Shown here piece after piece: positions 3,353 to 54,500 of a stretch of DNA of 64,000 nt. How positions within the stretch are numbered: position 1 is the first letter of the stretch; each line of letters begins with the position of its first letter. Below the pieces are notes generated by a model, which saw only the letters and a program-made list of their open reading frames with translations, was not told where the DNA came from and made no database searches. This stretch comes from Macrostomum lignano (Eukaryota). Both the position numbers and the translations under genes were made by a program. The stretch is from NCBI GenBank assembly GCA_002269645.1, contig NIVC01001020.1, positions 124,001 through 188,000 of the forward strand. Direction: 5' to 3'.

Positions 3353-6300
3353 ATGGAATCAGCAAATGTGGCAAATGCCAAAGCAGCTGCAAAAATCCAG
3401 TTTGCAGTCAGCCTTCTAGGCGATGGTATGTATTCGGTGCTCCAGAGACATTTTGGCTTAAAGAACCAACTGGATTTCAACGATTTGCTGAAGATGATGT
3501 CCAGCAAGGTCGATGAGGCTTTTTCAGGCTTGGAACCTCAAAATCGGCAGCTGCTGCAGCATCTTCTGGAGCGTGCGAAGGCAATCCGTGACCGACATTC
3601 TCGCCAAGACTTTGATGTGCACCGATCTGAGCACGATCTTGAGTGCTTATTAAAGCTCGCGTCCTTGATGGGATTGAGCGAGTGCCAGCAAGAAATTTCC
3701 AACTTTGCTGGAGTCTCAATCGGAGACTGGGAGAAGCTCAAGTCAGAGGGCAATGAGCATTATAAGAAAGGAAGATGGTTGGAGGCAATGAATTGCTACA
3801 CAAAGGCAATTCAATGTAATACAAATGTTGCTGTTCTGTACTCAAACCGAGCTCTGTGCGAAATCAATTTGCGCAAGTTCGATCTTGCTCGAGAAGATGC
3901 TGAAGATGCAATTGGACTTGACCCCAGCCAGATTAAGTTCCACAGAATTCTTTCTGAAGCTCTCTATAAGCTGCGGCTACATGAACCAGCCTTGGATGCG
4001 TGTCAGACTGGCCTCAGAATCGACTCTACAGACGAGACCCTTCTTCTACGAGAGCAACTTTGCACAGCTCTTGTTTTGGACAGCCAGCAGGATGTAGGTG
4101 CAGAAGGAAGCAGCCAAACCCAAAGCAGCGATCTCTACAAGAAGCTGCGAGATTGCCAAGTAGAGAGTATATCGGGAATTTCACCTGACGAAGTGAGCCC
4201 CATAGACAGCACCATTTTGCAGAGCATCAGCGAGCTGGATAAGGCCCACAAGATTCTGCAGTCCGGCAGAGGCGACATCACCGAAGAGCAGAAGGCATTT
4301 GAGATCTTTGAGTCCGTTGCAAAGCAAGGCAGTGCGCAGGGTCTGTACAACATGGCCATCATGTACAAAGACGGCAATGCAGGACTGGCTCGGGATCCAG
4401 CAAAGCATTTTCAGCTGTGTCTCCAAGCCGCCGAGCAGAAGCCGTACTTATCGGCCATGGACGACGTGTTTCTCAACATTGGTGTGGCGGAGGCGGAGAA
4501 CGCCCTCGGCGTGGCCTACAGAGACGGCATGGCCGTGGAGAAGGATGACAAGCTCGCATTCAAATGGTTTCTTAAGTCCGCTCGTCACGGCTACGCATCA
4601 GCCATGAGCAACCTCGGGCTGGCCTTCTACAACGGAGCTGGCTGCGAGCGGAGTCCGACCTCCGCCCGATGGTGGCTCCAGAAAGCCGCGGACCTCGGAC
4701 AGTCGGAGGCGCAGCTGAAATTAGCTGGGATGCTCATCGAAGGCGAGGGAGGACCAGCCGACTCTGAGAAGGCGGTTGAACTGCTCAAATCAGCTGCGGA
4801 CCAAGGCCTACCAGGCGCTCTGGAGGCGCTACAGCAGCAAATGCGGCGCGGAGCCATGAAGGCGAAGCGCATGAACTCAGCAAGAAAAATCGTGGAAGAG
4901 AAGGCAGCGGCTAACGACAAAGAGGCGCTGTTTCTCCTCGGAAGGAACTACTTGCACGGAGAAGGAGGATTCGAACAGGACTTTGAACTGGCCGAAATGT
5001 ATTTGAGGAAAGCTTCGGACCTGAACCATGAAAGGGCCTTTCCTGCTCTGGGCAAGCTGCTTCTGCAGCTAGGAAAAGAAGAAGATGCGGCTTTCTTTCT
5101 TCGAAAGGCTGCCGAGAGCGGTGATGCTGAGGCACAGTGGGTTTTGGGGTGCATGCTGTGTCTTGGACAAGGTTGTGAAAATAACCCCACTGAAGCTCGT
5201 AGATGGCTGCTCAGGTCCAAGAAAGACAGCCAAAAAGAAGTGGAAGAACTGTTGAAAGCTTCTTCTCAGATTTTGTTATTTGAAGCTGCTCGTGGCCTCT
5301 CTAAAGATGGTCTTAGTCAATATGAGAGATTTGCAAGGTATGTCGAATCCTTTGCATCAAGCCACAAGTCGAAGGAAGTGTTTCGTGACATTTTCCAGTA
5401 TTGTAAGCAGACGATGGGTGTGTCGCTGCATCCTTCGGGCTCCAATCATATGTCCACTATGCTGACTTCGGAGCAGTTGATGGCAAAAAAGGCTGCACAG
5501 GGGTCAAAAACCGCGCAAAAGTACTTCATCGGCTTCGAACTTTTGGACCAAATGCGCTCTGCTTTAGATAGCAACAACGGCCCAGAAGCTTTTCGACTCT
5601 ACCGACTGGCTGATAAAACCTGGCAGCCTCTTGTCATTGACATTTTTACCTGGAAGAAACTCTTTGATGCGGCCACTGCAGCCTTTGAGAAGAATCGTAA
5701 AGATTCTGAAGCTTATTTCGTCATAATTCATTACCATAGTGGTCGACAACTTTCAAATGTTGCTGAACTCCTTCGAATGGCGCTGGCTTGTACCAATCTG
5801 AACCCTAATGTGGCTGACTATTACAACTTGTTAGGCAACATGTACGGATTCAACGGAGATGGAATCAGCGCTTTAAGGGCCTTTGAGCGAGCTTTAGAGC
5901 TAGACTGGGAGCCCCATTGGCTTTACGGCAAAGCGTCGGCCATCAGGCATCATCAGCGGCTGAGCGATCGCAGAAGAGTCATCGAAGCGTATGAAGAGTA
6001 CATCTCTGCCAACGAAAAGGACGATCGTCACATTCCTGAGGCTTGCTATTGCATAGCGTTCGAGTATTTGGGCTTGAAAGACAAGGCAATGGCCAGGGAG
6101 TATTTCCGGAGAGGACTCCAGGCTGAGAGTCCCGAGGTGCGGCTGCCGTGCTTTGAACCCGTTAACGATTGCCCACCGAAAGAAATGCTGCAGAAGATGT
6201 TTCTGCTGTATGATCTGGAGAATTCCAGCCCGCTGAACTCCCAGTTGCCAAGTGAGTCGAGCCACGGAGACCGATGCAGCTCGTGTGGAAATCGGGACGC

Positions 6301-6397
6301 TTCGCAGCGCTGCAGCAGGTGCAAGAAGGCCTTCTACTGCAATAGAGACTGCCAGCTGAAGCACTGGAAGGCTCACAAGAAGCACTGTGTTAATTGA
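3353..6397 (+). CDS. Intronless 1014-aa protein: N-terminal Swt1-type HEPN-like domain, TPR repeats, multiple SEL1-like repeats, further TPRs, C-terminal zf-MYND
   Basis: TPR: EKLKSEGNEHYKKGRWLEAMNCYTKAI...VLYSNRALC. SEL1: AENALGVAYRDGMAVEKDDKLAFKWFLKSA, AMSNLGLAFYNGAGC, AQLKLAGMLIEGEGG. MYND: CSSC...CSRCKKAFYCNRDCQLKHWKAHKKHC. The N-terminal IRDRHSRQDF...DLECLLKLASLMG resembles HEPN. Pyrimidine tract plus AG at 3342-3343 just upstream of the ATG. Confidence 0.92.
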   Translation: MESANVANAKAAAKIQFAVSLLGDGMYSVLQRHFGLKNQLDFNDLLKMMSSKVDEAFSGLEPQNRQLLQHLLERAKAIRDRHSRQDFDVHRSEHDLECLLKLASLMGLSECQQEISNFAGVSIGDWEKLKSEGNEHYKKGRWLEAMNCYTKAIQCNTNVAVLYSNRALCEINLRKFDLAREDAEDAIGLDPSQIKFHRILSEALYKLRLHEPALDACQTGLRIDSTDETLLLREQLCTALVLDSQQDVGAEGSSQTQSSDLYKKLRDCQVESISGISPDEVSPIDSTILQSISELDKAHKILQSGRGDITEEQKAFEIFESVAKQGSAQGLYNMAIMYKDGNAGLARDPAKHFQLCLQAAEQKPYLSAMDDVFLNIGVAEAENALGVAYRDGMAVEKDDKLAFKWFLKSARHGYASAMSNLGLAFYNGAGCERSPTSARWWLQKAADLGQSEAQLKLAGMLIEGEGGPADSEKAVELLKSAADQGLPGALEALQQQMRRGAMKAKRMNSARKIVEEKAAANDKEALFLLGRNYLHGEGGFEQDFELAEMYLRKASDLNHERAFPALGKLLLQLGKEEDAAFFLRKAAESGDAEAQWVLGCMLCLGQGCENNPTEARRWLLRSKKDSQKEVEELLKASSQILLFEAARGLSKDGLSQYERFARYVESFASSHKSKEVFRDIFQYCKQTMGVSLHPSGSNHMSTMLTSEQLMAKKAAQGSKTAQKYFIGFELLDQMRSALDSNNGPEAFRLYRLADKTWQPLVIDIFTWKKLFDAATAAFEKNRKDSEAYFVIIHYHSGRQLSNVAELLRMALACTNLNPNVADYYNLLGNMYGFNGDGISALRAFERALELDWEPHWLYGKASAIRHHQRLSDRRRVIEAYEEYISANEKDDRHIPEACYCIAFEYLGLKDKAMAREYFRRGLQAESPEVRLPCFEPVNDCPPKEMLQKMFLLYDLENSSPLNSQLPSESSHGDRCSSCGNRDASQRCSRCKKAFYCNRDCQLKHWKAHKKHCVN

Positions 6398-10882: not shown

Positions 10883-12945
10883 TGTATTTAAAAGAAGACA
10901 ACTTATGGGCATTCTTGATCAAATGTGAGGCTTATAATTCGCATAGATCTGCGTTGGCATATATCATTTGCCCTACAAGTTTCCATACTTTGGTAAAAAT
11001 GACCATATTACCACTGTGTCGTAAGTGATTAAACAATTCTCATTTTCTTTCTACGCTCGTAATTGTTACTCCAAGTCAGTGGCCGTGGCATGACGTGAAT
11101 TTCGATTTTCGCAAAAATCCGATCCCAATACGCGAAAGCAAGCAAACCTTTGATTCCTTTGAATTGAACCATTTCGCAGTACTTTTGCATTTGTCGCTCA
11201 TTATGAAAGGGTGACAAGTAGTTCTAACTGTACGCTCGTAATGAGTAAGAGACAAATTAGTAGGCAAAGCGAAAAGTGGCCTCAATAAGTTAACAATGAG
11301 CCCGAGGGACCGAAAGTGTCCAATTTTCGGCCGATAGTAGACTTTCGAGCATATCGTCATCTGTCACTGGCTAAAAATGAATTTTTTTGGCATTCAGTTG
11401 GTTTTTTCTCATTCAACTTACTTTTAGTTATGTTTTATGGGCACTGACAAGGTGTCACTTTCGGCGCCAAAAGTGTTTGGAAGAGGAGTCCCTTTTGGCT
11501 AGCTTTTCCCTATTTTTTAATTAATATTTATGACCGAACCTGTCAAGTTCGGCCCTTGAGTTCAAGTTCAAGGTCGATGATCAAGAGGTCGCCCGCGGTT
11601 GCCTGGGCTGCACCAAATCAGAAAAATCGACTCTGGTTATAACAAATTGGCCACTGTAAGTTTATTTATATTGGCGACATTCAGTCATTTTAGACAGCCC
11701 TCTCGGCAGCCGGGGTTCTATATATCGTCGTGGGACTCCGTTGTCTTCTCCCCGAATCAACATTATCTGGGATCAGCGACAGCAGTCATAATCCAAGATT
11801 GGCAGCAGAAGTCATTCGCTAAGATCATAGTGTTACCTGGCCTGGTTGCTTCGGTCAGTCTGGGGTCTGGACTTCCTGGTCACCAGCAGCTTGATTGTTT
11901 GGATTTGATGAGTGGTGTCGGATTTCCATCCTCCAAATAATTGTACTTTCTGTTTTGCAATTCAGCCTCGTACTTTTCAGTTCGTCTACCATACTCTTCC
12001 GCGCAGACAATCTCAACCGTTAATTCACCATAAATAATTCAGCTAACCTGTTCATTATTGTTAGTATAAATACAACTTCAACCCGCGGCCTAGGCCCTCC
12101 ACTTCTTTTCTGCCCAGCTAATCACTTATAGCTTGTATTATTATTAGTTTATTGTCTATACGACAAGTGGCCTTCTTGACCTGCTTTACTGGATGCATTT
12201 TTGTCTGACCTTTTTTCAGTAGTCTTAGAAAAGAACCCCCTGCAAACGTCTTGTGTCCCTGCATGTGCAATGCGATCCAGTACCAGCAGTGTTGCTTCAT
12301 ATCGGCTACGACTTTAAGATTGACAAAAAAGGTTAACGAGTTTAGGATTAACTAAACTCCACCTTTCAAAATTCTTTCTGCTCTTGGGGCTGACCTTTAA
12401 GCAGGGGGAAGGCCAGAGCACTCAGCGATTAATTTCTGCACTCTGAGGCCCGAGAAGCCTTGCGATCCAAAAGCTCAAGAAGGCTGGACTTACTCGTATC
12501 TGAAGCGAGTGTTCAGTACCAATTTATAAGCATAAGTTTGAAAGGTTTGCAATGAGTTATGGAGCAAGTGCAGCATCATGGGATATTTTTAATTACCTCG
12601 CATTCCCTTCGCGCCCATTCCAGGGACAGAGTTGCAATTGCCTCCATTTTGTGAATTGCATTTCAGTTGATTGCCTAATATGACATTATTGCTGCCAGCA
12701 AGCCCTCGGGACTGGAATTTGCAACCGGTCTATTATCAATTGCTATCGTGAGAACACTGCATGGCTACCGCAGTTGTGGGGTGTGCGGCACTTCTATTAA
12801 TCATCTGTTTGTTGATCAGCTAAAAATGCAGAGCCATTACGTATAAAATGGGATGCAGCTTCAACAGACCTGCACATGCCGCTTCTGTCAGACAGCTCTC
12901 TGCGATTATTGCCTCCCTCTCTTTACTTTGTCCAAAGCCTCGCAG

Positions 12946-15663
12946 ATGAATTTCCTAATTGGAATCCTGGGCTGCCTGCTCCCAGCCGCGGTCCTTGGTC
13001 GGCAGTTCCATCTCACGCAGATCGGCTGCTTCAAGGATCTGGTTAACGGCACGCGAAGGGATCTGAGAGAGCTGAAGGACTTCGGCTTCAACAGGCTCGG
13101 AGATGCTGTCTTGCAGCATGGATCGTACGACAATTTCCTGTCGAACACGTCTGTTTTCAGCGCCTCGATGACTCACGAGCTGTGCGGCAGCGTCTGCGCT
13201 CTCGGAGGCAATGCGTTCATTGGCCTGCAATCGGGCTGGTGTCACTGCAGCAACTCCTACGGAAGCCAGGGAGCCGTCGCCCTGGCCGAATGCAGCTCAG
13301 GCTGCCCCGGAAATATGTCGCAAGTCTGCGGCGTTAACTACCGGAACATTGTGCTCAAGATAAGCTATGCCAGTGAGTTGGGGTACCCGCGTTGTCAAAA
13401 AGCGATTTTACACTTTGCCGAAGTTCCGCACTCAGACGTCTCAGACGTCAGACGTTTGTCACTATGTACAGGATGGGCTTTTCCTTTGACAATAAGAAGA
13501 TTTAGCTGTAGGGATGAGCATTTTGGTGTGTTTAGAGGCTGATGTACAAGTTTTCCTATATTTGCGTGTAAAGAGCGAGGATGTCAACTTAGTCCCTGGA
13601 ATGGAAGCGATGCATCAGAGCGACGCTTCCAGCAATGGCCGCTCAATAGGAAGGCTCTGTGGCTGTTTATTTGATGGAGCAATGGCAACTCAAGAGGGAC
13701 AACTGCCTCTGTGGTTAACCTCCCCATCCCACTTATCTTCCTAGCCCTCTCAGCCCTCTCATTGTGAATGGATTTATTTAAAAAATACATTAAAATTTAT
13801 GCATCCTGATTACAAGGACGACTTAAGTAGAAGGACGGGAAACCTCGTTTCTTAGAAAATTTTAGAAGGCAGGCTTTCCCGAAAAAATACACTGCGGAGA
13901 TAGGAAGTTTTCTTTTTTCAGCACAAAAATTGTTATTGCGTTTGATAGGAGGCAGATCCAGTGTTCATCTTTTGATATGCTGTGCTTTTCTTATTGCTCT
14001 ATCGATATTCATAAAGCTTTTCGTTCAAAGAAGTAGGATTCTATGTTAATTTTTATTCTACGTACATTTGCGCATGTCTTGTGCCTAAAAACCATTAGAA
14101 TAGCAAGGCTCAGCTCTTTGCTTTTATGAGTCTATTTTATCATTGTTATCTGACTGTGTAACAAATACGCGTAGCACAAATAATAAAATGGATTCATAAA
14201 ACCAAAGATTTAGAGCCGTGCAATGCATTTTTATTATTTTTAGGTACAGGAAATGTACGTAGAATAAAAATTAACATAGAATCCTACTTCTTTGAACGAA
14301 AAGCTTTGAATATCGATAGAGCAATAAGAAAGGCACAGCATATCAAAAGATGAACACTGGATCTGCCTCCTATCAAAAGCAATAGCAATTTTTGTGCTGA
14401 AAAAATGAAAACTTCAAACCTGCCTTCTAAAATTTTCTAAGAAACGAGGTTTCCCGTCCTACTTAAGTCGTCCTTGCCTGATTAATGATCGGCTCGTTCC
14501 GTCGCTGTAGACCAAAGATCATATATACACAAGATGGGCCACTCATTAACCGCTTATGCATGTGGCCACATAGAAGCCAATGTAAAAAATTTTGCATCTC
14601 GCGACAGCGCGAAAATCAACTACTGAAATCAATTTCGTCAGTAGTCTGTGCCGTGAATTCATGTGAATTCATCATTCCTAGTTCAATTGAGTAGCTTTTT
14701 AATTAATTCATGAGAATTTTTATTCAATTCTCCAAAAATAGCGTCTATGTCCCTAAGCTACTGAACTCAAATTTATAAGCGACCCATGTCGGCTTTTTTG
14801 CACAAGTGACGAAAAACAGCGTTCGCGCTTTCCCCATTGCCGAAATACAAAGTGGCCTATCTAGACAACACAAGATCTATACTGTAGATAGGAAAAATGC
14901 ATTCTTTCAATAGCAGCCTCTAATAAAATGGCACCCTATACTATACTGAAATGGCACTACAACTATAATAAAATGGCACCCCAACTATAATAAAATGGCA
15001 CCCCAACTGTAATGAAATGGCAACTCGACTATAATAAAATGGCACCCCAACTATAATGAAATGGCACCCCAACTATAATAAAATGGCACCCCAACTGTAA
15101 TGAAATGGCAACCCAACTGTAATAAAATGGCACCCCAACTATAATAAAATGGCACCCCAACTATAATAAAATGGCACCACAACTGTAATGAATGGCACCC
15201 CAACTATAATGAAATGGCACTACAACTATAATAAAATGGCACCCCAACTATAATAAAATGGCACCCCGACTGTAATGAAATGGCAACCCAACTAATGAAA
15301 TGGCATCCCAACTAATGAAATGGCATCCCAACTAATGAAATGGCATCCCAACTACTGAAGGTTGACCCTCGCTTGCTCATGGAGGCCACTGTCAGATTAA
15401 CCATGACGCACCAACCTCCACTTCCAGACAAAAACCTCTTCGTCCCTGGCAACCGCACCCTGATCGGCATGAATAAGCCGGAGGCGCCAGCCTTCTCGAC
15501 CGTTGGCGCTCGAACACTCACCGAATGCGTGTACCTGTGCGGTGCTGACTGCCAGGCGGTGATCTTCAGTCAGCAGCAGCGCCTGTGCCACCTGCTGGAG
15601 TATGCTGTGGTGCCAGCCGCCCTCAACAGCTCCAGCAGTGGCGAGTACTTTGTCCTTGGCTGA
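12946..15663 (+). CDS. Secreted WSC-domain + PAN/Apple-domain protein, 220 aa, 2 exons (12946-13372, 15428-15663)
   Basis: Signal peptide MNFLIGILGCLLPAAVLG. WSC motif QIGCFKD...MTHELCGSVC...CHCSNSYG...C...CPGNMSQVCG. Donor A|GTGAGT at 13373 and acceptor TTCCAG| at 15427 are both phase 1. Exon 2 has a PAN motif (TLTECVYLCGADCQAVIFSQQQRLCHL). 663 nt total, divisible by 3. Confidence 0.85.
13813..14476. mobile_element. Foldback MITE (664 bp) with long terminal inverted arms and an 8-bp TSD CCTGATTA (hAT/P-type), inside the WSC-PAN intron
   Basis: Arm 13813-14069 (CAAGGACGACTTAAGTAG...CGTACATTT) is the near reverse complement of 14251-14476. Identical CCTGATTA at 13805-13812 and 14477-14484. 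Confidence 0.9.
14921..15356. repeat. 22-bp minisatellite (AACTATAATAAAATGGCACCCC), about 19-20 copies, intronic
   Basis: Direct periodicity in the sequence. Confidence 0.93.
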
Positions 15664-17105: not shown

Positions 17106-19012
17106 TTATGCAATAAGTATCTCAATCGTTTCACAGTTCGGCAGCTGAAGAGTCCCTTCTTGTCCGCGAAGCGTCTGGTCTTTTAAGTCTTGAAAATTGC
17201 TGTCTTTGAGACCTCGCAGCTTTTTGCGAATGCTGAAAACCTGCTCCACTTGGGTGCAAAACGCATCAGCTACCAGCAGCTCCTGCTCGTCCGCATCAGC
17301 CCGCTGGGCCACATCCCGGATCCACGCCTGGGCGCTCAGTTCGCTCTCTGTTTGCCATTCGAGACGCAGGGCCCACAGCAATGCGTCAAAATTGATGTAG
17401 ACACAAAACTGATTATTGTCTAGCACTTTCGGAAAGCAGTGGGACAAAAAATCCTGACCTGGCAATGACAGTTTCGGCCTCTCCTGAAACTCAAAGCAGA
17501 ATTTCCACGCGCAGTCTTGGCCCGTCATCAGATGCCGCCAAACACAAGCAACAGTCGCCTCAGTCGCCGACCTCTCAGCAGACCAGGCGATGCCTCTGCT
17601 CACCGAGTGGCCTCTGCACTGACTCACGATTCTCTCCGCAGCTTTCCGGTCGCCAAACTTCAGGCAGGCCAGCGCTCTGAGAGCCTCCCGTGCTGAGCGG
17701 GCGCAGTCTGGCAGTCGGGCAGTCAGCTCTGTGAGCGACTCTCGAGATCGCGAGCTGCAGTCGCCGCGGCAGAGATGCTCCAGACACTCTCTTGCCAAAT
17801 CGTAAATCTCGTAATACTCAAGTCCACTATCCTTTCGGAGTGGCATTGGCTTTAGATCTGGCAGGGTTTGAAACGGATGGAAGTGGAATATCCCTGACTC
17901 GGTCACAGGTTCAAGACTGCCCATGAACTGTTGAAGCAGCTGAGGGAGCTGATCGATTGCTGTTCTCAATGTACTAGCAAGTGCCATAAGCTGTTTTTTA
18001 TCCTTCTGAGCTGCACTTTTTAAGTACACAGCGACGTCGCTCAGAAAGAAGTGCTCCATAATCCGGCCGTGAGCATTGTCGGACGAGCAGCTGCTCTCCA
18101 CACAGCAAAGCAGCATCTGCAGCGACATCCTCACGAGGCTCACGAGATTCTCCGGCTTCCATTGCTCGACCGGCGTCTCCTCCACCATTCGGAACGTGAT
18201 GGTCTTTACGTGGTACGGCTTGAGGCCTTGCTGGTTGAAGCCGTATTTGTTGCAGATGACCTTCTTGACCAGGTATTTCAGTGTGACGAACAGCTGACCT
18301 TGCAAGGTCGTGAGACTTCTGAGCATCCGCTTCTCTAGAAAGCTGGTGCTCACACGGAGCTCTTGGCCTCCACGCCCAGGAGAGGCCGCATGCACTACGT
18401 GACAGGGCGATGCATCGGAAACGAGACTCTGCTGGAGGGCCCGCAGTACTGACTTTGTGATGTTTGACTCGGAAAGTCGTCGAGGCTGGAGCGGCGCGAT
18501 AGGCGGGTAGCAGCAGAGACGACCGGCGGAAACTTCGTCAAAGGCCGGCCTCAAGGCGGATCCGGGATGCAGAACAGCAGGGTTCGAAGCTGAAAGGCAA
18601 CAAGTAAAGCAATTACCAATCTGCATTTCTTTTGTAACTTTGAATCCAACTTACCGAATCCGGGGCACTGAATGTGTCCATTATTCAGCTCATGCTGGTC
18701 TGTCGCACCGCTGCACTCGCACAGGCCCTTAGGATGGTAAAGTCTCCCTGGAATCAGCCTCATCACGTCAATATCGGACTGGATGTCAACTCTGCCGTCC
18801 AGTGTCGTCAGGCTGTTACCCCAGCCTTCTGAAAAGCTGCCAACAACGTACAGGTGATTGTAGTTCAGTCTTCTTCTCAGAATCTCTTGCAGAACATCAG
18901 CGACAGCACTTTGCAGGGCGGCTCTGGAGGCCACGAATCCGGAATTATTGAGGGCCGAGTGAAGCATTTGATTCAGCTCTGCGTCGCTGGGAACTTCTCT
19001 AAAATGGTGCAT
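17106..19012 (-). CDS. Mab-21/cGAS-like nucleotidyltransferase (cGLR-type) #1, 613 aa, 2 exons (19012-18655, 18589-17106)
   Basis: YVVGSFSEGWGNSL...QSDIDVM (G-S and DxD), third acidic residue in AFDEVSA, ELRVSTSFLEKRML...LFVTLKYLVKK...LKPYHVKTITF...MEHFFL (Mab-21 core). 65-bp phase-1 intron 18590-18654 (GTAAGT...TTTCAG). 1842 nt total. Confidence 0.9.
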
Positions 19013-19316
19013 TCATCGACAAATTTCTGTACTAAACAAATGTAAGGTCACAGCTAGCAAACAAAATTTTTATACATGATTTAGCATAGGATCAATTTTC
19101 TGCTCATAATGCATAGACTGTTTTCAAATGTCACTGCTAAATACTCGTACGAGCGTACCGGTATGAGATGACTAAGATTACAATTCACTAGCTAATCGAG
19201 CAGCGGCCATAACATTAAGGATCTTTCACACCGCTATCAAATGAAGATAAAATTTTGCCTGATCATACAGATTGTACACAAATTTTCGTCACTTTATGTT
19301 ACATAAATCACAGCTT

Positions 19317-20099
19317 TTAGTGTGAAAAGTTTAAGTGCTCAAAAATCATACTTTCGTACTTGATTGCCAAATCGCTCGAGTGATTGCGCAGAAGATTCAC
19401 ATTAGGATCCAACGGACTCTGCTGATTAGCCTCCGCTTTCACAAGTAAGTCCACAACCTTCTCGTGTCCGTTTTGCAATGCAATTTGTAGAGGAGTGAAG
19501 CCGTTGTTTGCTTGAAGACTGACATCAGCTTGGGCGTTTATGAGGGATTCCACGATTTGCAAATGGCCGTTCTGCGCCGCCACGTAGAGAGGGGATTCTC
19601 CGGTGTTTGTCTGAAGATTGACGTTTGCCTGAGCATTGATGAGCGTTTCCGTGACTTGCTGATGACCGATTTGCGACGCGATAAAGAGAGGCGAGTAGCC
19701 ATTGTTCTGCTGGCAATCCACTTCCGATTTTGCCTCGATGAGCTCGTTCATGACTTGAACTTGGCCATGCTGTGATGCAATGTGAAGCGGCGATGAGCCA
19801 TTTGCCTTTTCTAAACAGTTTATATCCGCCTGTGCTCCGATGAGCGAGTCGAAGACTTTCTGATGACCATTGATTAATGCGATGTGTAGTGGGGACAGGC
19901 CAGTTCTGGTGTAGACATCGACGCTTGCGAATGCCCCGATGAGTGTCTGAACCACCTCATGGTGACCAAAATGCGATGCTATGTATAGAGGTGAGCAGCC
20001 TTCGTCAGTGCATTGGTGATTGATGTCAGCTTGTACTTGCGAGAGTAAATCCACGACTTGCTGATTACCATTCTGCGATGCAAAGTAGAGAGGGGACAT
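19317..20099 (-). CDS. Ankyrin-repeat ORF (7 complete repeats plus a partial upstream one); possibly the 5' part of cGLR #1
   Basis: Repeated G.SPL.IAS..GH..VV..LI.A.AD.N units. The frame stays open upstream of the ATG to ~20170 with ANK-like QIAESLIEAQADVNLQTNNG, so the true start or upstream exon is unresolved. Confidence 0.88.
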   Translation of the reverse strand: MSPLYFASQNGNQQVVDLLSQVQADINHQCTDEGCSPLYIASHFGHHEVVQTLIGAFASVDVYTRTGLSPLHIALINGHQKVFDSLIGAQADINCLEKANGSSPLHIASQHGQVQVMNELIEAKSEVDCQQNNGYSPLFIASQIGHQQVTETLINAQANVNLQTNTGESPLYVAAQNGHLQIVESLINAQADVSLQANNGFTPLQIALQNGHEKVVDLLVKAEANQQSPLDPNVNLLRNHSSDLAIKYESMIFEHLNFSH

Positions 20100-20909
20100 G
20101 CCATTGTTAGTTTGAAGATTGACATCGGCTTGCGCTTCAATCAGTGACTCGGCTATTTGCGTAAATAATTATGAACACCGTGAAGAACCTCACGGGGTCA
20201 GTCATTGCTGCAAGTTAACTATCGATAATTGGATAAACTCGAGATATTTTCTGGGTCGAGAATATTCTGAGTCGGCTGCAGCCTTCCTTTTTTATAGGCA
20301 GCTTCAATCCGCCCACCCGCCGCCGCCAACGCGCAATTTCTTTCCATTTCTTCCAGTTTCACAACCGCCCGGCCCGTCCAAACTTCTGTTGTTAAAACGA
20401 GGTTGCCTGCGGAGTTTGCTGGGCTGCTTTACATGAGCAATGCATCTTATTGTTCTTTTTCACATATACTGGGATGGACTAGGGGCCGAAAGAATGAGTC
20501 ACCCTCTCGTCACAGTACCTTGTTTCGTCGTAAACGCGATTCCAATTAATTACTTTACGTGTTGCTCTGTGTCCTTGAAGGGCGCATTGATGCCTTTTTT
20601 CTTTTATTCTGCAATAAATATTCTTGTCTCAAATTGCACAAAATATTGCTTGACCCCTTAGCAAATATTGCTAATACATGAATGAGGGCTCTTGCTGTGT
20701 GTGCTGCTGTACGTGGGTCCACTAGGAGACAAGGGGTCAGCAAACTTTTTTACCTCAAGGTCCAGATAGAGAAGCTGGAGCATGACTGCAGGCCAGAGAG
20801 GGGAGAGAAGCGAAAGAGATTAGAAGGAGATTGGAGGATTGGAGAGAAGAGCGATAAGAAAAGACAGGCCTTCTCTGGTCTCAGCGAGTTCAGGTGCGAA
20901 CCTACTCAT

Positions 20910-21084
20910 TGTAATGACTCAGACTAGCTATTTAGTTTGGCGAGAGAAACGATGCACTTAAATGAGCCGACTGCTCAATTCAATATATTTATAGGCCCGA
21001 GAGCATTGCGTAATAAGAGTATTGCTACGAGTTAGTTCATCGACCAAGCCAAGTACATTATTACCGCGCAGAGCGTACACTACA
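20910..21084 (-). repeat. 3' LTR of the Gypsy element
   Basis: Matches 25414-25588. Confidence 0.95.
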
Positions 21085-21315
21085 TCTCTCCTCATTTTGG
21101 ATTAAAAGTTTTACTGCAAAAGGTTTTTTAAATACTGAAAATTACCACAAATACGAGTAAAATCTTGCAAAGAAGAAACATTAACAGAGAAAATGTTTCT
21201 TCTTGTACATGTAATGCCTTAGCTGGAGAATGAACAATTTTCTATCCGCAATCTCAAGACGCAAAAGCAAAATCAAACAAGATATTAGCGTCAGTCTGCC
21301 AAGCGCGAGTTATAG

Positions 21316-48525: not shown

Positions 48526-51500
48526 CAGGGGCGTCGCCACCGAGGGAGGGACAGTGGGACATGCCCCCCCCCCCAGTAAAATGAGTGCCTGCAGCGCAAA
48601 AATGAGTTGGGGCTAAAATGATCGTGCCTGCGGTGCAAAAATGAGTAGGCGCTAAAATGAGTGCCCACGGCGCTAAAATGAGTGCCTGCGGCGCTAAAAT
48701 GAGTGCCTGTGGCGCAAAAATGAGTTGGCGCTAAAATGAGTGCCTGTGGCGCTAAAATGAGTAGGCGCTAAAATGAGTGCCCACGGCGCTAAAATGAGTG
48801 CCCACGGCGCTAAAATGAGTTGGCGCTAAAATGAATGCCTGTGGCGCTAAAATGAGTTGGCGCTAAAATGAGTGCCTGCGGTGCAAAAATGAGTAGGCGC
48901 TAAAATGAGTGCCCACGGCGCTAAAATGAGTGCCTGTGGCGCAAAAATGAGTTGGCGCTAAAATGAATGCCTGTGGCGCTAAAATGAGTAGGCGCTAAAA
49001 TGAGTGCCCACAGCGCTAAAATGAGTGCCCACGGCGCTAAAATGAGTTGGCGCTAAAATGAATGCCTGTGGCGCTAAAATGAGTTGGCGCTAAAATGAGT
49101 GCCTGCGGTGCAAAAATGAGTAGGCGCTAAAATGAGTGCCTGCGGCGCTAAAATGAGTGCCTGTGGCGCTAAAATGAGTAGGCGCTAAAATGAGTGCCCA
49201 CAGCGCTAAAATGAGTGCCCACGGCGCTAAAATGAGTAGGCGCTAAAATGAGTGCCTGTGGCGCTAAAATGAGTAGGCGCTAAAATGAGTGCCCACGGCG
49301 CTAAAATGAGTGCCTGTGGCGCAAAAATGAGTTGGCGCTAAAATGAGTGCCTGTGACGCTAAAATGAGTTGGCGCTAAAATGAGTGCCTGTGGCGCTAAA
49401 ATGAGTAGGCGCTAAAATGAGTGCCCACGGCGCTAAAATGAGTGCCTGTGGCGCAAAAATGAGTTGGCGCTAAAATGAGTGCCTGTGACGCTAAAATGAG
49501 TTGGCGCTAAAATGAGTGCCTGTGGCGCTAAAATGAGTAGGCGCTGAAATGAGTGCCCACGGCGCTAAAATGAGTGCCCACGGCGCTAAAATGATTGCCT
49601 GCGGCGCTAAAATGAGTGCCTGCGGTGCAAAAATGAGTGCCTGCGGCGCTAAAATGAGTGCCTGTGGCGCAAAAATGAGTAGGCGCTAAAATGAGTGCCT
49701 GCGGCGCTAAAATGAGTGCCTGTGGTGCAAAAATGAGTTGGCGCTAAAATGAGTGCCTGTGACGCTAAAATGAGTTGGCGCTAAAATGAGTGCCTGTGGC
49801 GCTAAAATGAGTAGGCGCTAAAATGAGTGCCTGCGGCGCTAAAATGAGTGCCTGTGGTGCAAAAATGAGTGCCCACGGCGCTAAAATGAGTGCCCACGGC
49901 GCTAAAATGAGTGCCTGCGGCGCTAAAATGAGTGCCTGCGGTGCAAAAATGAGTGCCTGCGGCGCTAAAATGAGTGCCTGTGGCGCAAAAATGAGTAGGC
50001 GCTAAAATGAGTGCCTGCGGCGCTAAAATGAGTGCCTGTGGTGCAAAAATGAGTTGGCGCTAAAATGAGTGCCTGTGGCGCTAAAATGAGTAGGCGCTAA
50101 AATGAGTGCCCACGGCGCTAAAATGAGTGCCCACGGCGCTAAAATGAGTTGGCGCTAAAATGAATGCCTGTGGCGCTAAAATGAGTTGGCGCTAAAATGA
50201 GTGCCTGCGGTGCAAAAATGAGTAGGCGCTAAAATGAGTGCCCACGGCGCTAAAATGAGTGCCTGTGGCGCAAAAAATAAGTTGGCGCTAAAATGAATGC
50301 CTGTGGCGCTAAAATGAGTAGGCGCTAAAATGAGTGCCCACAGCGCTAAAATGAGTGCCCACGGCGCTAAAATGAGTTGGCGCTAAAATGAATGCCTGTG
50401 GCGCTAAAATGAGTTGGCGCTAAAATGAGTGCCTGCGGTGCAAAAATGAGTAGGCGCTAAAATGAGTGCCTGCGGCGCTAAAATGAGTGCCTGTGGCGCT
50501 AAAATGAGTAGGCGCTAAAATGAGTGCCCACAGCGCTAAAATGAGTGCCCACGGCGCTAAAATGAGTAGGCGCTAAAATGAGTGCCTGTGGCGCTAAAAT
50601 GAGTAGGCGCTAAAATGAGTGCCCACGGCGCTAAAATAAGTGCCTGTGGCGCAAAAATGAGTTGGCGCTAAAATGAGTGCCTGTGGCGCAAAAATGAGTA
50701 GGCGCTAAAATGAGTGCCTGTGGCGCTAAAATGAGTTGGCGCTAAAATGAGTGCCTGTGGCGCTAAAATGAGTAGGCGCTAAAATGAGTGCCCACGGCGC
50801 TAAAATGAGTGCCCACGGCGCTAAAATGAGTTGGCGCTAAAATGAGTGCCTGTGACGCTAAAATGAGTTGGCGCTAAAATGAGTGCCTGTGGCGCTAAAA
50901 TGAGTAGGCGCTAAAATGAGTGCCCACGGCGCTAAAATGAGTGCCCACGGCGCTAAAATGAGTGCCCACGGCGCTAAAATGAGTGCCTGCGGCGCTAAAA
51001 TGAGTGCCTGCGGTGCAAAAATGAGTGCCTGCGGCGCTAAAATGAGTGCCTGTGGCGCAAAAATGAGTAGGCGCTAAAATGAGTGCCTGCGGCGCTAAAA
51101 TGAGTGCCTGTGGTGCAAAAATGAGTTGGCGCTAAAATGAGTGCCTGTGACGCTAAAATGAGTTGGCGCTAAAATGAGTGCCTGTGGCGCTAAAATGAGT
51201 AGGCGCTAAAATGAGTGCCTGCGGCGCTAAAATGAGTGCCTGTGGTGCAAAAATGAGTGCCCACGGCGCTAAAATGAGTGCCCACGGCGCTAAAATGAGT
51301 GCCTGCGGCGCTAAAATGAGTGCCTGCGGTGCAAAAATGAGTGCCTGCGGCGCTAAAATGAGTAGGCGCTAAAATGAGTGCCTGTGGCGCTAAAATGAGT
51401 GCCTGTGGCGCAAAAATGAGTAGGCGCTAAAATGAGTGCCTGCGGCGCTAAAATGAGTGCCTGTGGTGCAAAAATGAGTTGGCGCTAAAATGAGTGCCTG

Positions 51501-54500
51501 TGACGCTAAAATGAGTTGGCGCTAAAATGAGTGCCTGTGGCGCTAAAATGAGTAGGCGCTAAAATGAGTGCCTGCGGCGCTAAAATGAGTGCCTGTGGTG
51601 CAAAAATGAGTGCCCACGGCGCTAAAATGAGTGCCCACGGCGCTAAAATGAGTGCCTGCGGCGCTAAAATGAGTGCCTGCGGTGCAAAAATGAGTGCCTG
51701 CGGCGCTAAAATGAGTAGGCGCTAAAATGAGTGCCTGTGGCGCTAAAATGAGTGCCTGTGGCGCAAAAATGAGTAGGCGCTAAAATGAGTGCCTGCGGCG
51801 CTAAAATGAGTGCCTGTGGTGCAAAAATGAGTTGGCGCTAAAATGAGTGCCTGTGGCGCAAAAATGAGTAGGCGCTAAAATGAGTGCCTGCGGTGCAAAA
51901 ATGAGTAGGCGCTAAAATGAGTGCCTGCGGCGTTAAAATGAGTGCCCACGGCGCTAAAATGAGTTGGCGCTAAAATGAATGCCTGTGGCGCTAAAATGAG
52001 TTGGCGCTAAAATGAGTGCCTGTGGCGCTAAAATGAGTAGGCGCTAAAATGAGTAGGCGCTAAAATGAGTGCCCACGGCGCTAAAATGAGTTGGCGCTAA
52101 AATGAGTGCCTGTGACGCTAAAATGAGTTGGCGCTAAAATGAGTGCCTGTGGCGCTAAAATGAGTAGGCGCTAAAATGAGTGCCCACGGCGCTAAAATGA
52201 GTGCCCACGGCGCTAAAATGAGTGCCTGCGGCGCTAAAATGAGTGCCTGCGGTGCAAAAATGAGTGCCTGCGGCGCTAAAATGAGTGCCTGTGGCGCAAA
52301 AATGAGTAGGCGCTAAAATGAGTGCCTGCGGCGCTAAAATGAGTGCCTGTGGTGCAAAAATGAGTTGGCGCTAAAATGAGTGCCTGTGACGCTAAAATGA
52401 GTTGGCGCTAAAATGAGTGCCTGTGGCGCTAAAATGAGTAGGCGCTAAAATGAGTGCCTGCGGCGCTAAAATGAGTGCCTGTGGTGCAAAAATGAGTGCC
52501 CACGGCGCTAAAATGAGTGCCCACGGCGCTAAAATGAGTGCCTGCGGCGCTAAAATGAGTGCCTGCGGTGCAAAAATGAGTGCCTGCGGCGCTAAAATGA
52601 GTAGGCGCTAAAATGAGTGCCTGTGGCGCTAAAATGAGTGCCTGTGGCGCAAAAATGAGTAGGCGCTAAAATGAGTGCCTGCGGCGCTAAAATGAGTGCC
52701 TGTGGTGCAAAAATGAGTTGGCGCTAAAATGAGTGCCTGTGACGCTAAAATGAGTTGGCGCTAAAATGAGTGCCTGTGGCGCTAAAATGAGTAGGCGCTA
52801 AAATGAGTGCCTGCGGCGCTAAAATGAGTGCCTGTGGTGCAAAAATGAGTGCCCACGGCGCTAAAATGAGTGCCCACGGCGCTAAAATGAGTGCCTGCGG
52901 CGCTAAAATGAGTGCCTGCGGTGCAAAAATGAGTGCCTGCGGCGCTAAAATGAGTAGGCGCTAAAATGAGTGCCTGTGGCGCTAAAATGAGTGCCTGTGG
53001 CGCAAAAATGAGTAGGCGCTAAAATGAGTGCCTGCGGCGCTAAAATGAGTGCCTGTGGTGCAAAAATGAGTTGGCGCTAAAATGAGTGCCTGTGGCGCAA
53101 AAATGAGTAGGCGCTAAAATGAGTGCCTGCGGTGCAAAAATGAGTAGGCGCTAAAATGAGTGCCTGCGGCGTTAAAATGAGTGCCCACGGCGCTAAAATG
53201 AGTTGGCGCTAAAATGAATGCCTGTGGCGCTAAAATGAGTTGGCGCTAAAATGAGTGCCTGCGGCGTTAAAATGAGTGCCTGCGGTGCAAAAATGAGTGC
53301 CTGCGGTGCAAAAATGAGTGCCTGTGGTGCAAAAATGAGTGCCCACGGCGCTAAAATGAGTGCCTGCGGTGCAAAAATGAGTGCCTGCGGTGCAAAAATG
53401 AGTGCCTGCGGTGCAAAAATGAGTGCCTGCGGTGCAAAAATGAGTGCCTGTGGTGCAAAAATGAGTGCCCACGGCGCTAAAATGAGTGCCTGCGGTGCAA
53501 AAATGAGTGCCTGTGGTGCAAAAATGAGTGCCCACGGCGCTAAAATGAGTGCCCACGGCGCTAAAATGAGTGCCTGCGGCGCTAAAATGAGTGCCTGCGG
53601 TGCAAAAATGAGTGCCTGCGGCGCTAAAATGAGTGCCTGTGGCGCAAAAATGAGTAGGCGCTAAAATGAGTGCCTGCGGCGCTAAAATGAGTGCCTGTGG
53701 TGCAAAAATGAGTTGGCGCTAAAATGAGTGCCTGTGGCGCAAAAATGAGTAGGCGCTAAAATGAGTGCCTGTGGTGCAAAAATGAGTAGGCGCTAAAATG
53801 AGTGCCTGCGGTGCAAAAATGAGTAGGCGCTAAAATGAGTGCCTGTGGCGCTAAAATGAGTAGGCGCTAAAATGAGTGCCTGCGGTGCTAAAATGAGTTG
53901 GCGCTAAAATGAGTGCCTGCGGCGCAAAAATGAGTAGGCGCTAAAATGAGTGCCTGCGGCGCAAAAATGAGTAGGCGCTAAAATGAGTGCCTGTGGCGCA
54001 AAAATGAGTAGGCGCTAAAATGAGTGCCTGTGGCGCTAAAATGAGTAGGCGCTAAAATGAGTAGGTGCAAAAATGAGTGCCTGTGGTGCAAAAATGAGTT
54101 GGCGCTAAAATGAGTGCCTGCGGTGCTAAAATGAGTAGGCGCTAAAATGAGTTGGCGCTAAAATGAGTGCCTGTGGCGCAAAAATGAGTAGGCGCTAAAA
54201 TGAGTGCCTGTGGCGCTAAAATGAGTTGGCGCTAAAATGAGTGCCTGTGGCGCTAAAATGAGTAGGCGCTAAAATGAGTGCCCACGGCGCTAAAATGAGT
54301 GCCCACGGCGCTAAAATGAGTTGGCGCTAAAATGAGTGCCTGTGACGCTAAAATGAGTTGGCGCTAAAATGAGTGCCTGTGGCGCTAAAATGAGTAGGCG
54401 CTAAAATGAGTGCCCACGGCGCTAAAATGAGTGCCCACGGCGCTAAAATGAGTGCCTGCGGCGCTAAAATGAGTGCCTGCGGTGCAAAAATGAGTGCCTG

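What the first reader, a model, noticed from the sequence alone, without database searches (positions are those of the whole stretch)
17106..20170. cGLR #1 and the upstream 7x-ankyrin ORF become one gene if a single base is restored
Seen: splicing donor GAA A|GTATGA (19351) to acceptor TTTAG| (19032) gives ...KYE-IQKFVDECTILEKF; one extra base in the CCC run at 18989-18991 then continues in frame into PSDAELNQMLHSAL and the NTase. That reproduces the ANK-NTase layout of locus #2. The alternative is two separate cistrons 300 bp apart, with the AG at 19032 as a trans-splice site 20 nt before ATG 19012: a sensor/enzyme operon-like pair (operons are established in flatworms). Both readings are inference.
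Basis: partly seen in the sequence, partly recalled or inferred. Interest (0 to 1): 0.72.

Follow-up and report, generated by a model that had tools for sequence, protein, structure and literature searches.

The report
Unannotated flatworm ankyrin-cGAS-like fusion gene

Summary
The window is Macrostomum lignano assembly Mlig_3_7, contig NIVC01001020.1 (window x = contig x + 124000).

That junction is not needed. The donor 8 nt upstream (ATCAA|GTACGA, exon ends 19360) joined to the acceptor 33 nt downstream (CATTTTAG|A, exon starts 18998) gives an uninterrupted 875-codon frame. It encodes 7 ankyrin repeats, then ...LAIK-EVPSDAELNQ..., then a cGAS-like nucleotidyltransferase.

This junction matches the family's gene structure. 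Six paralog loci and locus #2 of this window all have a phase-2 intron at this exact codon, then a 344-350-nt exon (344 here), then a phase-1 intron. The closest paralog has the same TCCCAGCGAC, with three C, at the same distance from its acceptor, so there is no sign of a homopolymer error.

The operon reading lacks support: the gap holds no spliced-leader acceptor motif and no poly(A) signal, and an overlapping upstream ATG precedes ATG 19012.

The enzyme part has the complete GS / DxD / D active-site motif and a cGAS fold. Ankyrin-cGLR fusions are a published architecture.

Still open: no transcript evidence could be obtained, the gene has no annotated model, and its start codon is uncertain. 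Verdict: a new member of a known kind, of low interest.

The parts
20286..20296 (-). TATA-box-like CTATAAAAAAGG, about 80 nt upstream of ATG 20205. Candidate core promoter.
   Evidence: Read directly from the sequence. Function not tested.
20208..20213 (-). TTGCAG. The only match near the 5' end to the M. lignano spliced-leader acceptor motif [TC]TNCAG that lies next to a start codon. It ends 2 nt before ATG 20205.
   Evidence: Motif from PMC8629364. Use not tested.
20166..20219 (-). Decayed ankyrin repeat with three in-frame stops (VNLQQ*LTP*GSSRCS*LFTQIAESLI). It marks the 5' truncation of the ANK array relative to the longer paralogs.
   Evidence: the tblastn alignment of P0002 runs up to 20219. 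Comparison with paralog N-termini.
20194..20205 (-). Candidate first coding exon, ATGACTGACCCC (MTDP), donor CCC|GTGAGG. Tentative.
   Evidence: It is the only ATG upstream of 20099 that can be joined in frame to the ANK ORF.
20148..20193 (-). Candidate 46-nt mini-intron (GTGAGG...CCGAG) with a weak acceptor. Tentative.
   Evidence: No transcript evidence.
19360..20147 (-). Ankyrin-repeat exon with 7 repeats. It ends in phase 2 at donor ATCAA|GTACGA. An alternative start is ATG 20099 (MSPLY).
   Evidence: Pfam Ank_2 8e-51 and Ank 1.8e-45 with 7 stretches. Donor phase.
18999..19359 (-). 361-nt phase-2 intron.
   Evidence: Its position and phase are identical to those in 6 paralog loci and locus #2.
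18655..18998 (-). 344-nt exon encoding the start of the cGAS-like NTase (EVPSDAELNQ...GS...DID...CPGF). Entered in phase 2, left in phase 1. The CCC run at 18989-18991 is read as the Pro codon of V-P-S-D.
   Evidence: P0002 and the P0022 locus have exons of the same length, 344 nt.
18590..18654 (-). 65-nt phase-1 intron, GTAAGT...TTTCAG.
   Evidence: Conserved in all 8 loci compared.
17106..18589 (-). Last exon. It holds the third catalytic Asp (PAFDEV), the Mab21 helical lobe, a family-specific C-terminal domain of about 224 aa (17780-17109) and the stop TAA at 17108-17106.
43340..47562 (+). Locus #2, used for comparison. Exons 43340-44643, 44739-45085 (347 nt) and 46088-47562, with the same phase-2 and phase-1 introns. 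The annotated 709-aa product PAA73301.1 is an exact suffix of this model.

Best explanation
Window 17106-20205 (minus strand) is one cis-spliced gene of Macrostomum lignano. It encodes a protein of about 875 residues: 7 ankyrin repeats, a short linker, a cGAS-like (Mab21-family) nucleotidyltransferase with a complete catalytic motif, and a family-specific C-terminal domain.

The ANK exon ends at 19360 (donor CAA|GTACGA, phase 2). It is spliced to 18998 (acceptor TTTTAG|A), giving ...SSDLAIK-EVPSDAELNQ... with no change to the sequence. A second intron, 18654-18590, is phase 1.

The gene is an N-terminally truncated, unannotated paralog of a large M. lignano family of ANK-cGLR fusion genes.

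What is shown: the open frame, the domain content, the fold, the catalytic residues and the conserved intron positions.

What is inferred: that the junction is actually used, and that the protein is made. The working model is also inference: the ankyrin array binds a ligand or partner and controls synthesis of a nucleotide second messenger, as in other cGLRs.
For: - **Open frame.** Joining 19360 to 18998 gives 876 codons with a single terminal stop.
- **Paralog gene structure.** Four RNA-annotated paralogs (P0002, P0006, P0016, P0004) are three-exon genes: ANK exon, phase-2 intron, a 344-347-nt exon, phase-1 intron, and a last exon of about 1450 nt. P0024 has the same last three exons, with a 350-nt middle exon. 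The 5'-partial P0022 locus has the same acceptor and the same phase-1 intron. The split codon sits at the same alignment position in all of them, and the window's middle exon is 344 nt.
- **Locus #2.** It has the same two phases, and its model is confirmed by the exact match to PAA73301.1.
- **CCC run.** The closest paralog reads TTTCAG|ATGCAGTCCCAGCGAC against the window's TTTTAG|AGAAGTTCCCAGCGAC. Both have 7 nt between the acceptor and a run of three C.
- **Fusion is the family norm.** Many M. lignano proteins cover 94-98% of the fusion model as single ANK+Mab21 products.
- **Selection.** dN/dS of the enzyme part against 5 paralogs is 0.15-0.27.
- **cGLR identity.**
  - Motif VVGS-x20-DIDV-x53-FDE, conserved across the family.
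  - AF2 model with pLDDT 84.8.
  - Foldseek top hits are human cGAS (8.6e-8), Cv-cGLR1, MB21D2 and MAB21L1.
  - The profile search of the PDB returns only cGAS and a cGLR.
- **Literature.** Li et al. 2023 list ANK-cGLR as a domain architecture and cloned five M. lignano cGLRs.
Against: - No transcript, junction read or spliced-leader read from this locus could be examined.
- The gene has no product in the RNA-based Mlig_3_7 annotation, although locus #2 on the same contig has one. It may therefore be silent or very weakly expressed.
- The donor GTACGA departs from GT[AG]AG, which all six paralogs and locus #2 use.
- The start codon is unresolved. The ANK frame has no in-frame ATG before 20099. 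ATG 20205 needs a 46-nt intron with a poor acceptor.
- Relative to most paralogs the gene lacks the N-terminal leader and most of the ANK repeats.
Confidence: 0.75

Rival explanations
1. Decaying or silent partial duplicate. The locus is a 5'-truncated copy that is no longer transcribed or spliced productively. The open frame is a remnant, and which junction is correct has no consequence.
For: - No gene model in an RNA-based annotation, while locus #2 has one.
- A decayed ANK repeat with stops lies just upstream, and there is no clean start codon.
- The donor is non-consensus.
- A young LTR retroelement lies 700 nt upstream.
Against: - 875 codons across three exons carry no stop or frameshift, despite about 33% protein divergence from the nearest paralog.
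- dN/dS is 0.15-0.27.
- All catalytic residues and both conserved splice junctions are kept.
- The pairwise dN/dS averages over both lineages, so recent loss of function cannot be excluded.
Confidence: 0.15
2. The true junction is 19351/19032, and the assembly or the allele lacks one C at 18989-18991.
For: The arithmetic works. The assembly is PacBio-based, and homopolymer indels are typical of such data. The donor GTATGA and the acceptor TTTAG are as good by motif as the alternatives.
Against: - It places the exon start 11 codons upstream of the position conserved in 7 other loci, and it adds 14 linker residues with no counterpart in any paralog.
- The closest paralog has the same three-C run in the same frame.
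- The assembly was Pilon-polished with Illumina and RNA-seq data.
- An in-frame junction exists without any edit.
Confidence: 0.03
3. There are two cistrons in a spliced-leader-resolved operon: an ANK protein ending at 19317, and an NTase starting at ATG 19012 after trans-splicing at 19031.
For: About 15% of M. lignano genes are assigned to operons and about 30% are trans-spliced (PMC8629364). ATG 19012 opens a 613-codon spliced frame.
Against: - The gap holds no [TC]TNCAG motif and no AATAAA/ATTAAA.
- The M. lignano spliced leader ends in ATG. Joined at 19031 it opens a 12-codon upstream ORF, and ATG 19016 overlaps ATG 19012 out of frame (reading of the sequence; spliced-leader sequence).
- The NTase frame is closed by TGA immediately before ATG 19012, as expected of intron sequence.
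- In the paralogs the pipeline that cuts at spliced-leader sites left ANK and Mab21 in one mRNA.
Confidence: 0.04
4. A fusion through a different in-frame pair: the reader's donor (exon ends 19352, phase 1) joined to the second AG of the tandem TTTTAGAG (exon starts 18996), giving ...LAIKYE-KVPSDAEL.... It could be the only junction used, or an alternative isoform.
For: It is in frame without any edit. Donor GTATGA is comparable to GTACGA.
Against: A GAG| acceptor is disfavoured, because the first AG after the T-rich tract is normally used (general splicing knowledge). The intron phase would be 1, whereas all 7 comparison loci have phase 2 here.
Confidence: 0.03

Closest known systems
Annotated M. 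lignano ANK + Mab21 proteins, for example BOX15_Mlig016300g1 (P0002, 1148 aa), Mlig029835g1 (P0006) and Mlig031899g1 (P0016)
   Same: 49-61% identity over 94-98% of the fusion model. Same domain order. Same three-exon structure with phase-2 and phase-1 introns at the same codons. Same C-terminal extension.
   Different: The window gene has only 7 ANK repeats and lacks the non-ANK N-terminal leader of the long paralogs. Its start codon is unclear, its donor is non-consensus, and it has no annotated model.
Locus #2 of the same window (PAA73301.1, BOX15_Mlig014288g1, and its 98.3% identical copy PAA48234.1)
   Same: ANK-like N-terminus followed by a cGLR-like enzyme. Identical intron phases, with a middle exon of 347 nt against 344 nt.
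   Different: Only 29% identity to locus #1, so it belongs to a different subclade, near PAA93208.1 and PAA68676.1 of Li et al. The window copy carries an in-frame TAG at 44291-44293 where the other copy has Glu.
ANK-cGLR fusions described by Li et al. 2023 (bioRxiv 10.1101/2023.02.22.529553), for example in Stylophora pistillata
   Same: Ankyrin repeats fused to a cGLR nucleotidyltransferase core with a complete active-site motif.
   Different: A different phylum, and no detectable close sequence relation. The Macrostomum family adds a C-terminal domain of about 220 aa that matches no Pfam family and no PDB fold.
Human cGAS and Cv-cGLR1 (PDB 6ct9, 8gjw)
   Same: The bilobed NTase fold. Foldseek E 1e-7, TM 0.55-0.59 normalised to the target. 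GS, DxD and D catalytic residues.
   Different: 13-17% identity. No N-terminal ANK array and no C-terminal extension in cGAS. The ligand and the product of the flatworm enzyme are unknown.

Membership tests
cGLR (criteria of Li et al. 2023) | Active-site motif h[QT]GS X8-20 [DE]h[DE]h X50-90 h[DE]h | tested here: met
   VVGS-x20-DIDV-x53-FDE(V), with Val in place of Q/T before GS. The looser G[S/G] plus [E/D]h[E/D]...[E/D] form used in the paper's methods is fully met. The residues are conserved across family alignment A2 (criteria).
cGLR (criteria of Li et al. 2023) | Homology across both the NTase core and the C-terminal helix bundle | tested here: met
   Foldseek alignments span 364-401 columns of cGAS and cGLR chains that are 346-353 residues long. 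The sequence profile hits the cGAS helical lobe at E = 3e-4. Pfam Mab-21_C scores 21.1 bits, below its 24.1-bit cut-off.
cGLR (criteria of Li et al. 2023) | Predicted structural homology to known cGLR or CD-NTase enzymes | tested here: met
   AF2 pLDDT 84.8 and pTM 0.86. The top 50 PDB matches are all cGAS, cGLRs, MB21D2, MAB21L1 or MiD51.
cGLR (criteria of Li et al. 2023) | Ligand-dependent synthesis of a nucleotide second messenger | not testable with these tools
   Needs biochemistry. M. lignano is not mentioned in the main text of Li et al., although five of its proteins were cloned.
ANK-cGLR fusion gene (M. lignano paralog family) | ANK repeats and NTase in one reading frame, joined at the conserved phase-2 intron | tested here: met
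   The split codon is at the same position, and the exon is 344 nt as in P0002 and the P0022 locus.
ANK-cGLR fusion gene (M. lignano paralog family) | A single mature mRNA carrying both parts | not testable with these tools
   No reads or transcript assemblies for this locus were reachable. No protein more than 68% identical exists in the collections searched.
ANK-cGLR fusion gene (M. lignano paralog family) | N-terminal non-ANK leader and a long ANK array, as in P0002, P0004, P0006 and P0024 | tested here: not met
   The ANK frame opens inside a repeat. A decayed repeat with stops lies upstream. No further ANK exons occur in the window. P0016 is similarly short.
Spliced-leader-resolved operon (M. 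lignano) | Trans-splice acceptor motif [TC]TNCAG before the downstream cistron, and a poly(A) signal after the upstream one | tested here: not met
   Neither occurs between 19316 and 18990. Motif from PMC8629364.
Spliced-leader-resolved operon (M. lignano) | Spliced-leader-containing reads at the acceptor | not testable with these tools
   No read data available.
Pseudogene | Frameshifts, premature stops, lost splice sites or relaxed constraint | tested here: not met
   The 875-codon frame is intact and both conserved junctions keep GT..AG. dN/dS is 0.15-0.27. Loss of the promoter or start codon cannot be excluded.

The most novel reading that the evidence does not exclude
The two donors 8 nt apart (19360, 19352) and the acceptors 33 nt apart (19032, 18999) could act as a splicing switch. 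One pairing makes the full ANK-cGLR enzyme. The others make an ANK-only protein ending ...PATQS*, which could act as a decoy or regulator. This would sit within a flatworm-specific radiation of ANK-cGLR sensors that carry an uncharacterised C-terminal domain, in a phylum otherwise reported to have largely lost cGLR signalling.
Probability: 0.08. Interest if true: 0.5.

Novelty: new member of a known kind. Interest (0 to 1): 0.22.

Why it matters
The practical result is a corrected gene model. An unannotated ANK-cGLR paralog can be added to the M. lignano gene set without editing the assembly, and the apparent frameshift or operon disappears.

More broadly, M. lignano carries a large lineage-specific family of ankyrin-fused cGAS-like enzymes with complete active sites. 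The profile search found 84 cluster representatives below E = 1e-30, and all nine of these whose names were looked up are from this species. [quoted passage not shown] 2023). The family therefore offers a tractable model for asking what non-nucleic-acid-binding appendages do in cGLR sensing. That point is already visible in public annotations and is not specific to this locus.

Tried and rejected
Look-ups of the 506-aa ORF and of the retroelement pol ORF found nothing on record.
- **Two homology searches** found no protein more than 68% identical. No transcript-derived product could be used to read the junction.
- **Linker comparison.** The protein alignment of the linker in 53 paralogs could not separate the two junctions. 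The linker is hypervariable, and both readings keep PSDAEL.
- **Splice motifs** do not discriminate either. Both donors miss GT[AG]AG at position +4, and both acceptors are TAG.
- **The first PDB profile search** (alignment A1) was swamped by ankyrin columns. It was repeated with the NTase-only alignment A2.
- **Near-identical copy.** I fetched the copy of locus #2 on contig NIVC01004199.1, hoping to reach a duplicate of locus #1 and read its CCC run. The 10-kb flank reaches only the equivalent of window position ~33.9 kb.
- **Literature search** for Macrostomum with STING and cGAS gave nothing relevant.
- **Foldseek of the C-terminal 224 residues** gave no match.
- **Rejected idea.** The retroelement does not interrupt the ANK exon. 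Its 3' LTR ends at 20910, 700 nt upstream.
Full report
**Source and setting**

An exact look-up of the 1014-aa TPR/Sel1/MYND ORF (window 3353-6397) places the window on Macrostomum lignano assembly Mlig_3_7 (GCA_002269645.1), contig NIVC01001020.1. Window coordinate x equals contig x + 124000. The feature lies on the minus strand.

**Checking the observation**

- the donor GAAA|GTATGA has its intron G at 19351;
- the acceptor TTTAG| has its G at 19032;
- the CCC run is at 18989-18991;
- the ATG is at 19012.

Joining 19352 to 19031 reads ...LAIKYEIQKFVDECTILEKFPATQS*, one base out of frame with the enzyme. The upstream ORF carries 7 Pfam ankyrin stretches (Ank_2, E = 8e-51).

**A junction that needs no repair**

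Joining them, and removing the obvious 65-nt intron 18654-18590 (GTAAGT...TTTCAG), gives 876 codons with one terminal stop. The product runs ...NHSSDLAIK-EVPSDAELNQMLHSAL... straight into the enzyme.

**Which junction is the real one?**

Splice motifs do not decide. Both donors miss the M. lignano consensus GT[AG]AG at position +4, and both acceptors are TAG. The protein linker does not decide either, because it is hypervariable among 53 paralogs and both readings keep PSDAEL.

Gene structure does decide. I fetched six paralog loci and mapped their annotated proteins onto the DNA.
- P0002, P0006, P0016 and P0004 are three-exon genes: ANK exon, phase-2 intron, a 344-347-nt exon, phase-1 intron after ...PGF/PGY, and a last exon of about 1450 nt.
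- P0024 has the same last three exons, with a 350-nt middle exon.
- The 5'-partial P0022 locus has the same acceptor and the same phase-1 intron.
- The window's exon 18998-18655 is 344 nt. It is entered in phase 2 and left in phase 1.
- When the eight loci are lined up at the acceptor, the split codon falls at the same position before the conserved ...EL(S/N)xxLHSAL... block.
- Locus #2 of the window has the same two phases with a 347-nt exon. My model of it is confirmed because the annotated 709-aa protein PAA73301.1 is an exact suffix of it.

The closest paralog locus reads TTTCAG|ATGCAGTCCCAGCGACTCAGAGCTGA. The window reads TTTTAG|AGAAGTTCCCAGCGACGCAGAGCTGA. Both have 7 nt between the acceptor and a run of exactly three C, read as the Pro codon. 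There is therefore no sign of a lost C. The assembly was also polished with Pilon using Illumina and RNA-seq reads (PMC5730564).

It uses a disfavoured acceptor and the wrong phase. If it were used, it would still produce a fusion protein.

**The operon alternative**

M. lignano does trans-splice about 30% of its genes, and about 15% are assigned to operons (PMC8629364). The evidence at this locus points the other way.
- Between the ANK stop (19317) and ATG 19012 there is no match to the spliced-leader acceptor motif [TC]TNCAG and no AATAAA or ATTAAA.
- The spliced leader ends in ATG. Joined at 19031 it would open a short upstream ORF.
- ATG 19016 overlaps ATG 19012 out of frame.
- The enzyme frame is closed by TGA immediately before ATG 19012, as expected of intron sequence.
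- The Mlig_3_7 annotation is RNA-based, and its pipeline cuts transcripts at spliced-leader and poly(A) sites. It still reports dozens of paralogs as single ANK+Mab21 proteins that cover 94-98% of the fusion model.

**What the protein is**

- The enzyme part carries VVGS-x20-DIDV-x53-FDE. This is the GS loop plus the three catalytic acidic residues that define cGLRs in Li et al. 2023 (criteria). These residues are conserved across the family.
- A profile of the enzyme part hits only cGAS (E = 3e-4) and a cGLR in the PDB.
- The AlphaFold model is confident (pLDDT 84.8, pTM 0.86).
- Its best PDB matches are human cGAS (8.6e-8), Cv-cGLR1, Sp-cGLR1, MB21D2, MAB21L1 and MiD51.
- These matches cover only the first 380-400 of the 608 residues. 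The last ~224 residues form a separate domain conserved in the family. It is confidently folded but matches no Pfam family and no PDB fold.
- Li et al. list ANK-cGLR as a minor domain architecture and cloned five M. lignano cGLRs. [quoted passage not shown]

**Is the gene alive?**

In favour:
- 875 intact codons, despite about 33% protein divergence from the nearest paralog;
- dN/dS of 0.15-0.27 against five paralogs;
- conserved catalytic residues and conserved splice junctions.

Against:
- There is no product in the RNA-based annotation, although locus #2 on the same contig has one.
- The donor is non-consensus.
- The 5' end is unresolved.
  - The ANK frame opens inside a repeat, and a decayed repeat with three stops lies just upstream (20219-20166).
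  - The long paralogs' N-terminal leader is absent.
  - Possible starts are ATG 20205 with a 46-nt intron and a weak acceptor, ATG 20099 behind three out-of-frame ATGs, or a spliced-leader-donated ATG.
  - A TATA-like box (20296-20286) and a TTGCAG spliced-leader-type acceptor 2 nt before ATG 20205 are present, but neither was tested.

**Likely mechanism (inference)**

By analogy with characterised cGLRs, the enzyme would be held inactive until a ligand or partner is bound. It would then make a cyclic nucleotide signal for a downstream receptor. The ankyrin array and the unknown C-terminal domain are the candidate sensing or regulatory modules. Nothing here tests that.

**Verdict**

The two reading frames form one ordinary cis-spliced gene, an unannotated and N-terminally short member of a known, already annotated family of ANK-cGLR fusions. 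The single-base restoration and the operon are both unnecessary. Transcript evidence for this particular locus is still missing.

Noticed in passing
window 20910-25588 (minus): LTR retroelement with two 175-nt LTRs that are 100% identical (20910-21084 and 25414-25588). Its gag (zinc knuckle, aspartyl protease) and pol (RT, RNase H, integrase) ORFs are intact. It is a young Ty3/gypsy-type insertion whose 3' LTR ends about 700 nt upstream of the locus #1 ATG.
   Followed up: partly
window 44291-44293 (plus), locus #2: In-frame TAG inside an ankyrin-like repeat of locus #2. The 98.3% identical copy on contig NIVC01004199.1 (PAA48234.1, 1041 aa) has Glu there. The window copy is annotated only from a downstream Met (PAA73301.1, 709 aa). 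This is either a nonsense allele or copy, or a base error.
   Followed up: partly
window 17109-17780 (minus): The C-terminal ~224 residues of the enzyme are conserved across the M. lignano family (AWKFCFEF and YxNFDALL motifs). They fold confidently (pLDDT 81) into a mixed alpha/beta domain that matches no Pfam family and no PDB fold (best Foldseek E = 1.8).
   Followed up: partly
window 45104-46076 (plus): A (TTAC)n microsatellite of about 243 copies fills most of the 1002-nt phase-1 intron of locus #2.
   Followed up: no
window 25.7-42.9 kb and 48.6-57.2 kb: About half of the window is minisatellite and microsatellite arrays with periods of 4, 20-22, 29, 31, 32, 48 and others. One is an 8.6-kb array of a 21-nt unit at 48577-57176. 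These arrays create many long spurious ORFs on both strands.
   Followed up: no
window 20140-20213 (minus): The M. lignano spliced leader ends in ATG. Trans-spliced onto CCGAG|TCACTG (exon from 20147) it would be in frame with the ANK ORF (M-SLIEAQ...). Onto TTGCAG|CAATG (exon from 20207) it would read M-Q-stop just ahead of ATG 20205. Either could bear on the unresolved start codon.
   Followed up: no
window 3353-6397 (plus) and 12853-13542 (plus): A single-exon TPR/Sel1/zf-MYND gene (1014 aa) that is annotated in GCA_002269645.1, and a 229-aa ORF with a WSC domain (Pfam E = 9e-11) that was not examined further.
   Followed up: partly
locus L005 2400-5300 (paralog P0022, contig NIVC01001460.1): Upstream of the 5'-partial closest paralog lies a long tandem satellite with a period of roughly 300 nt, and no ANK exon within 3.6 kb. 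Its ANK part, if any, is displaced or lost.
   Followed up: no
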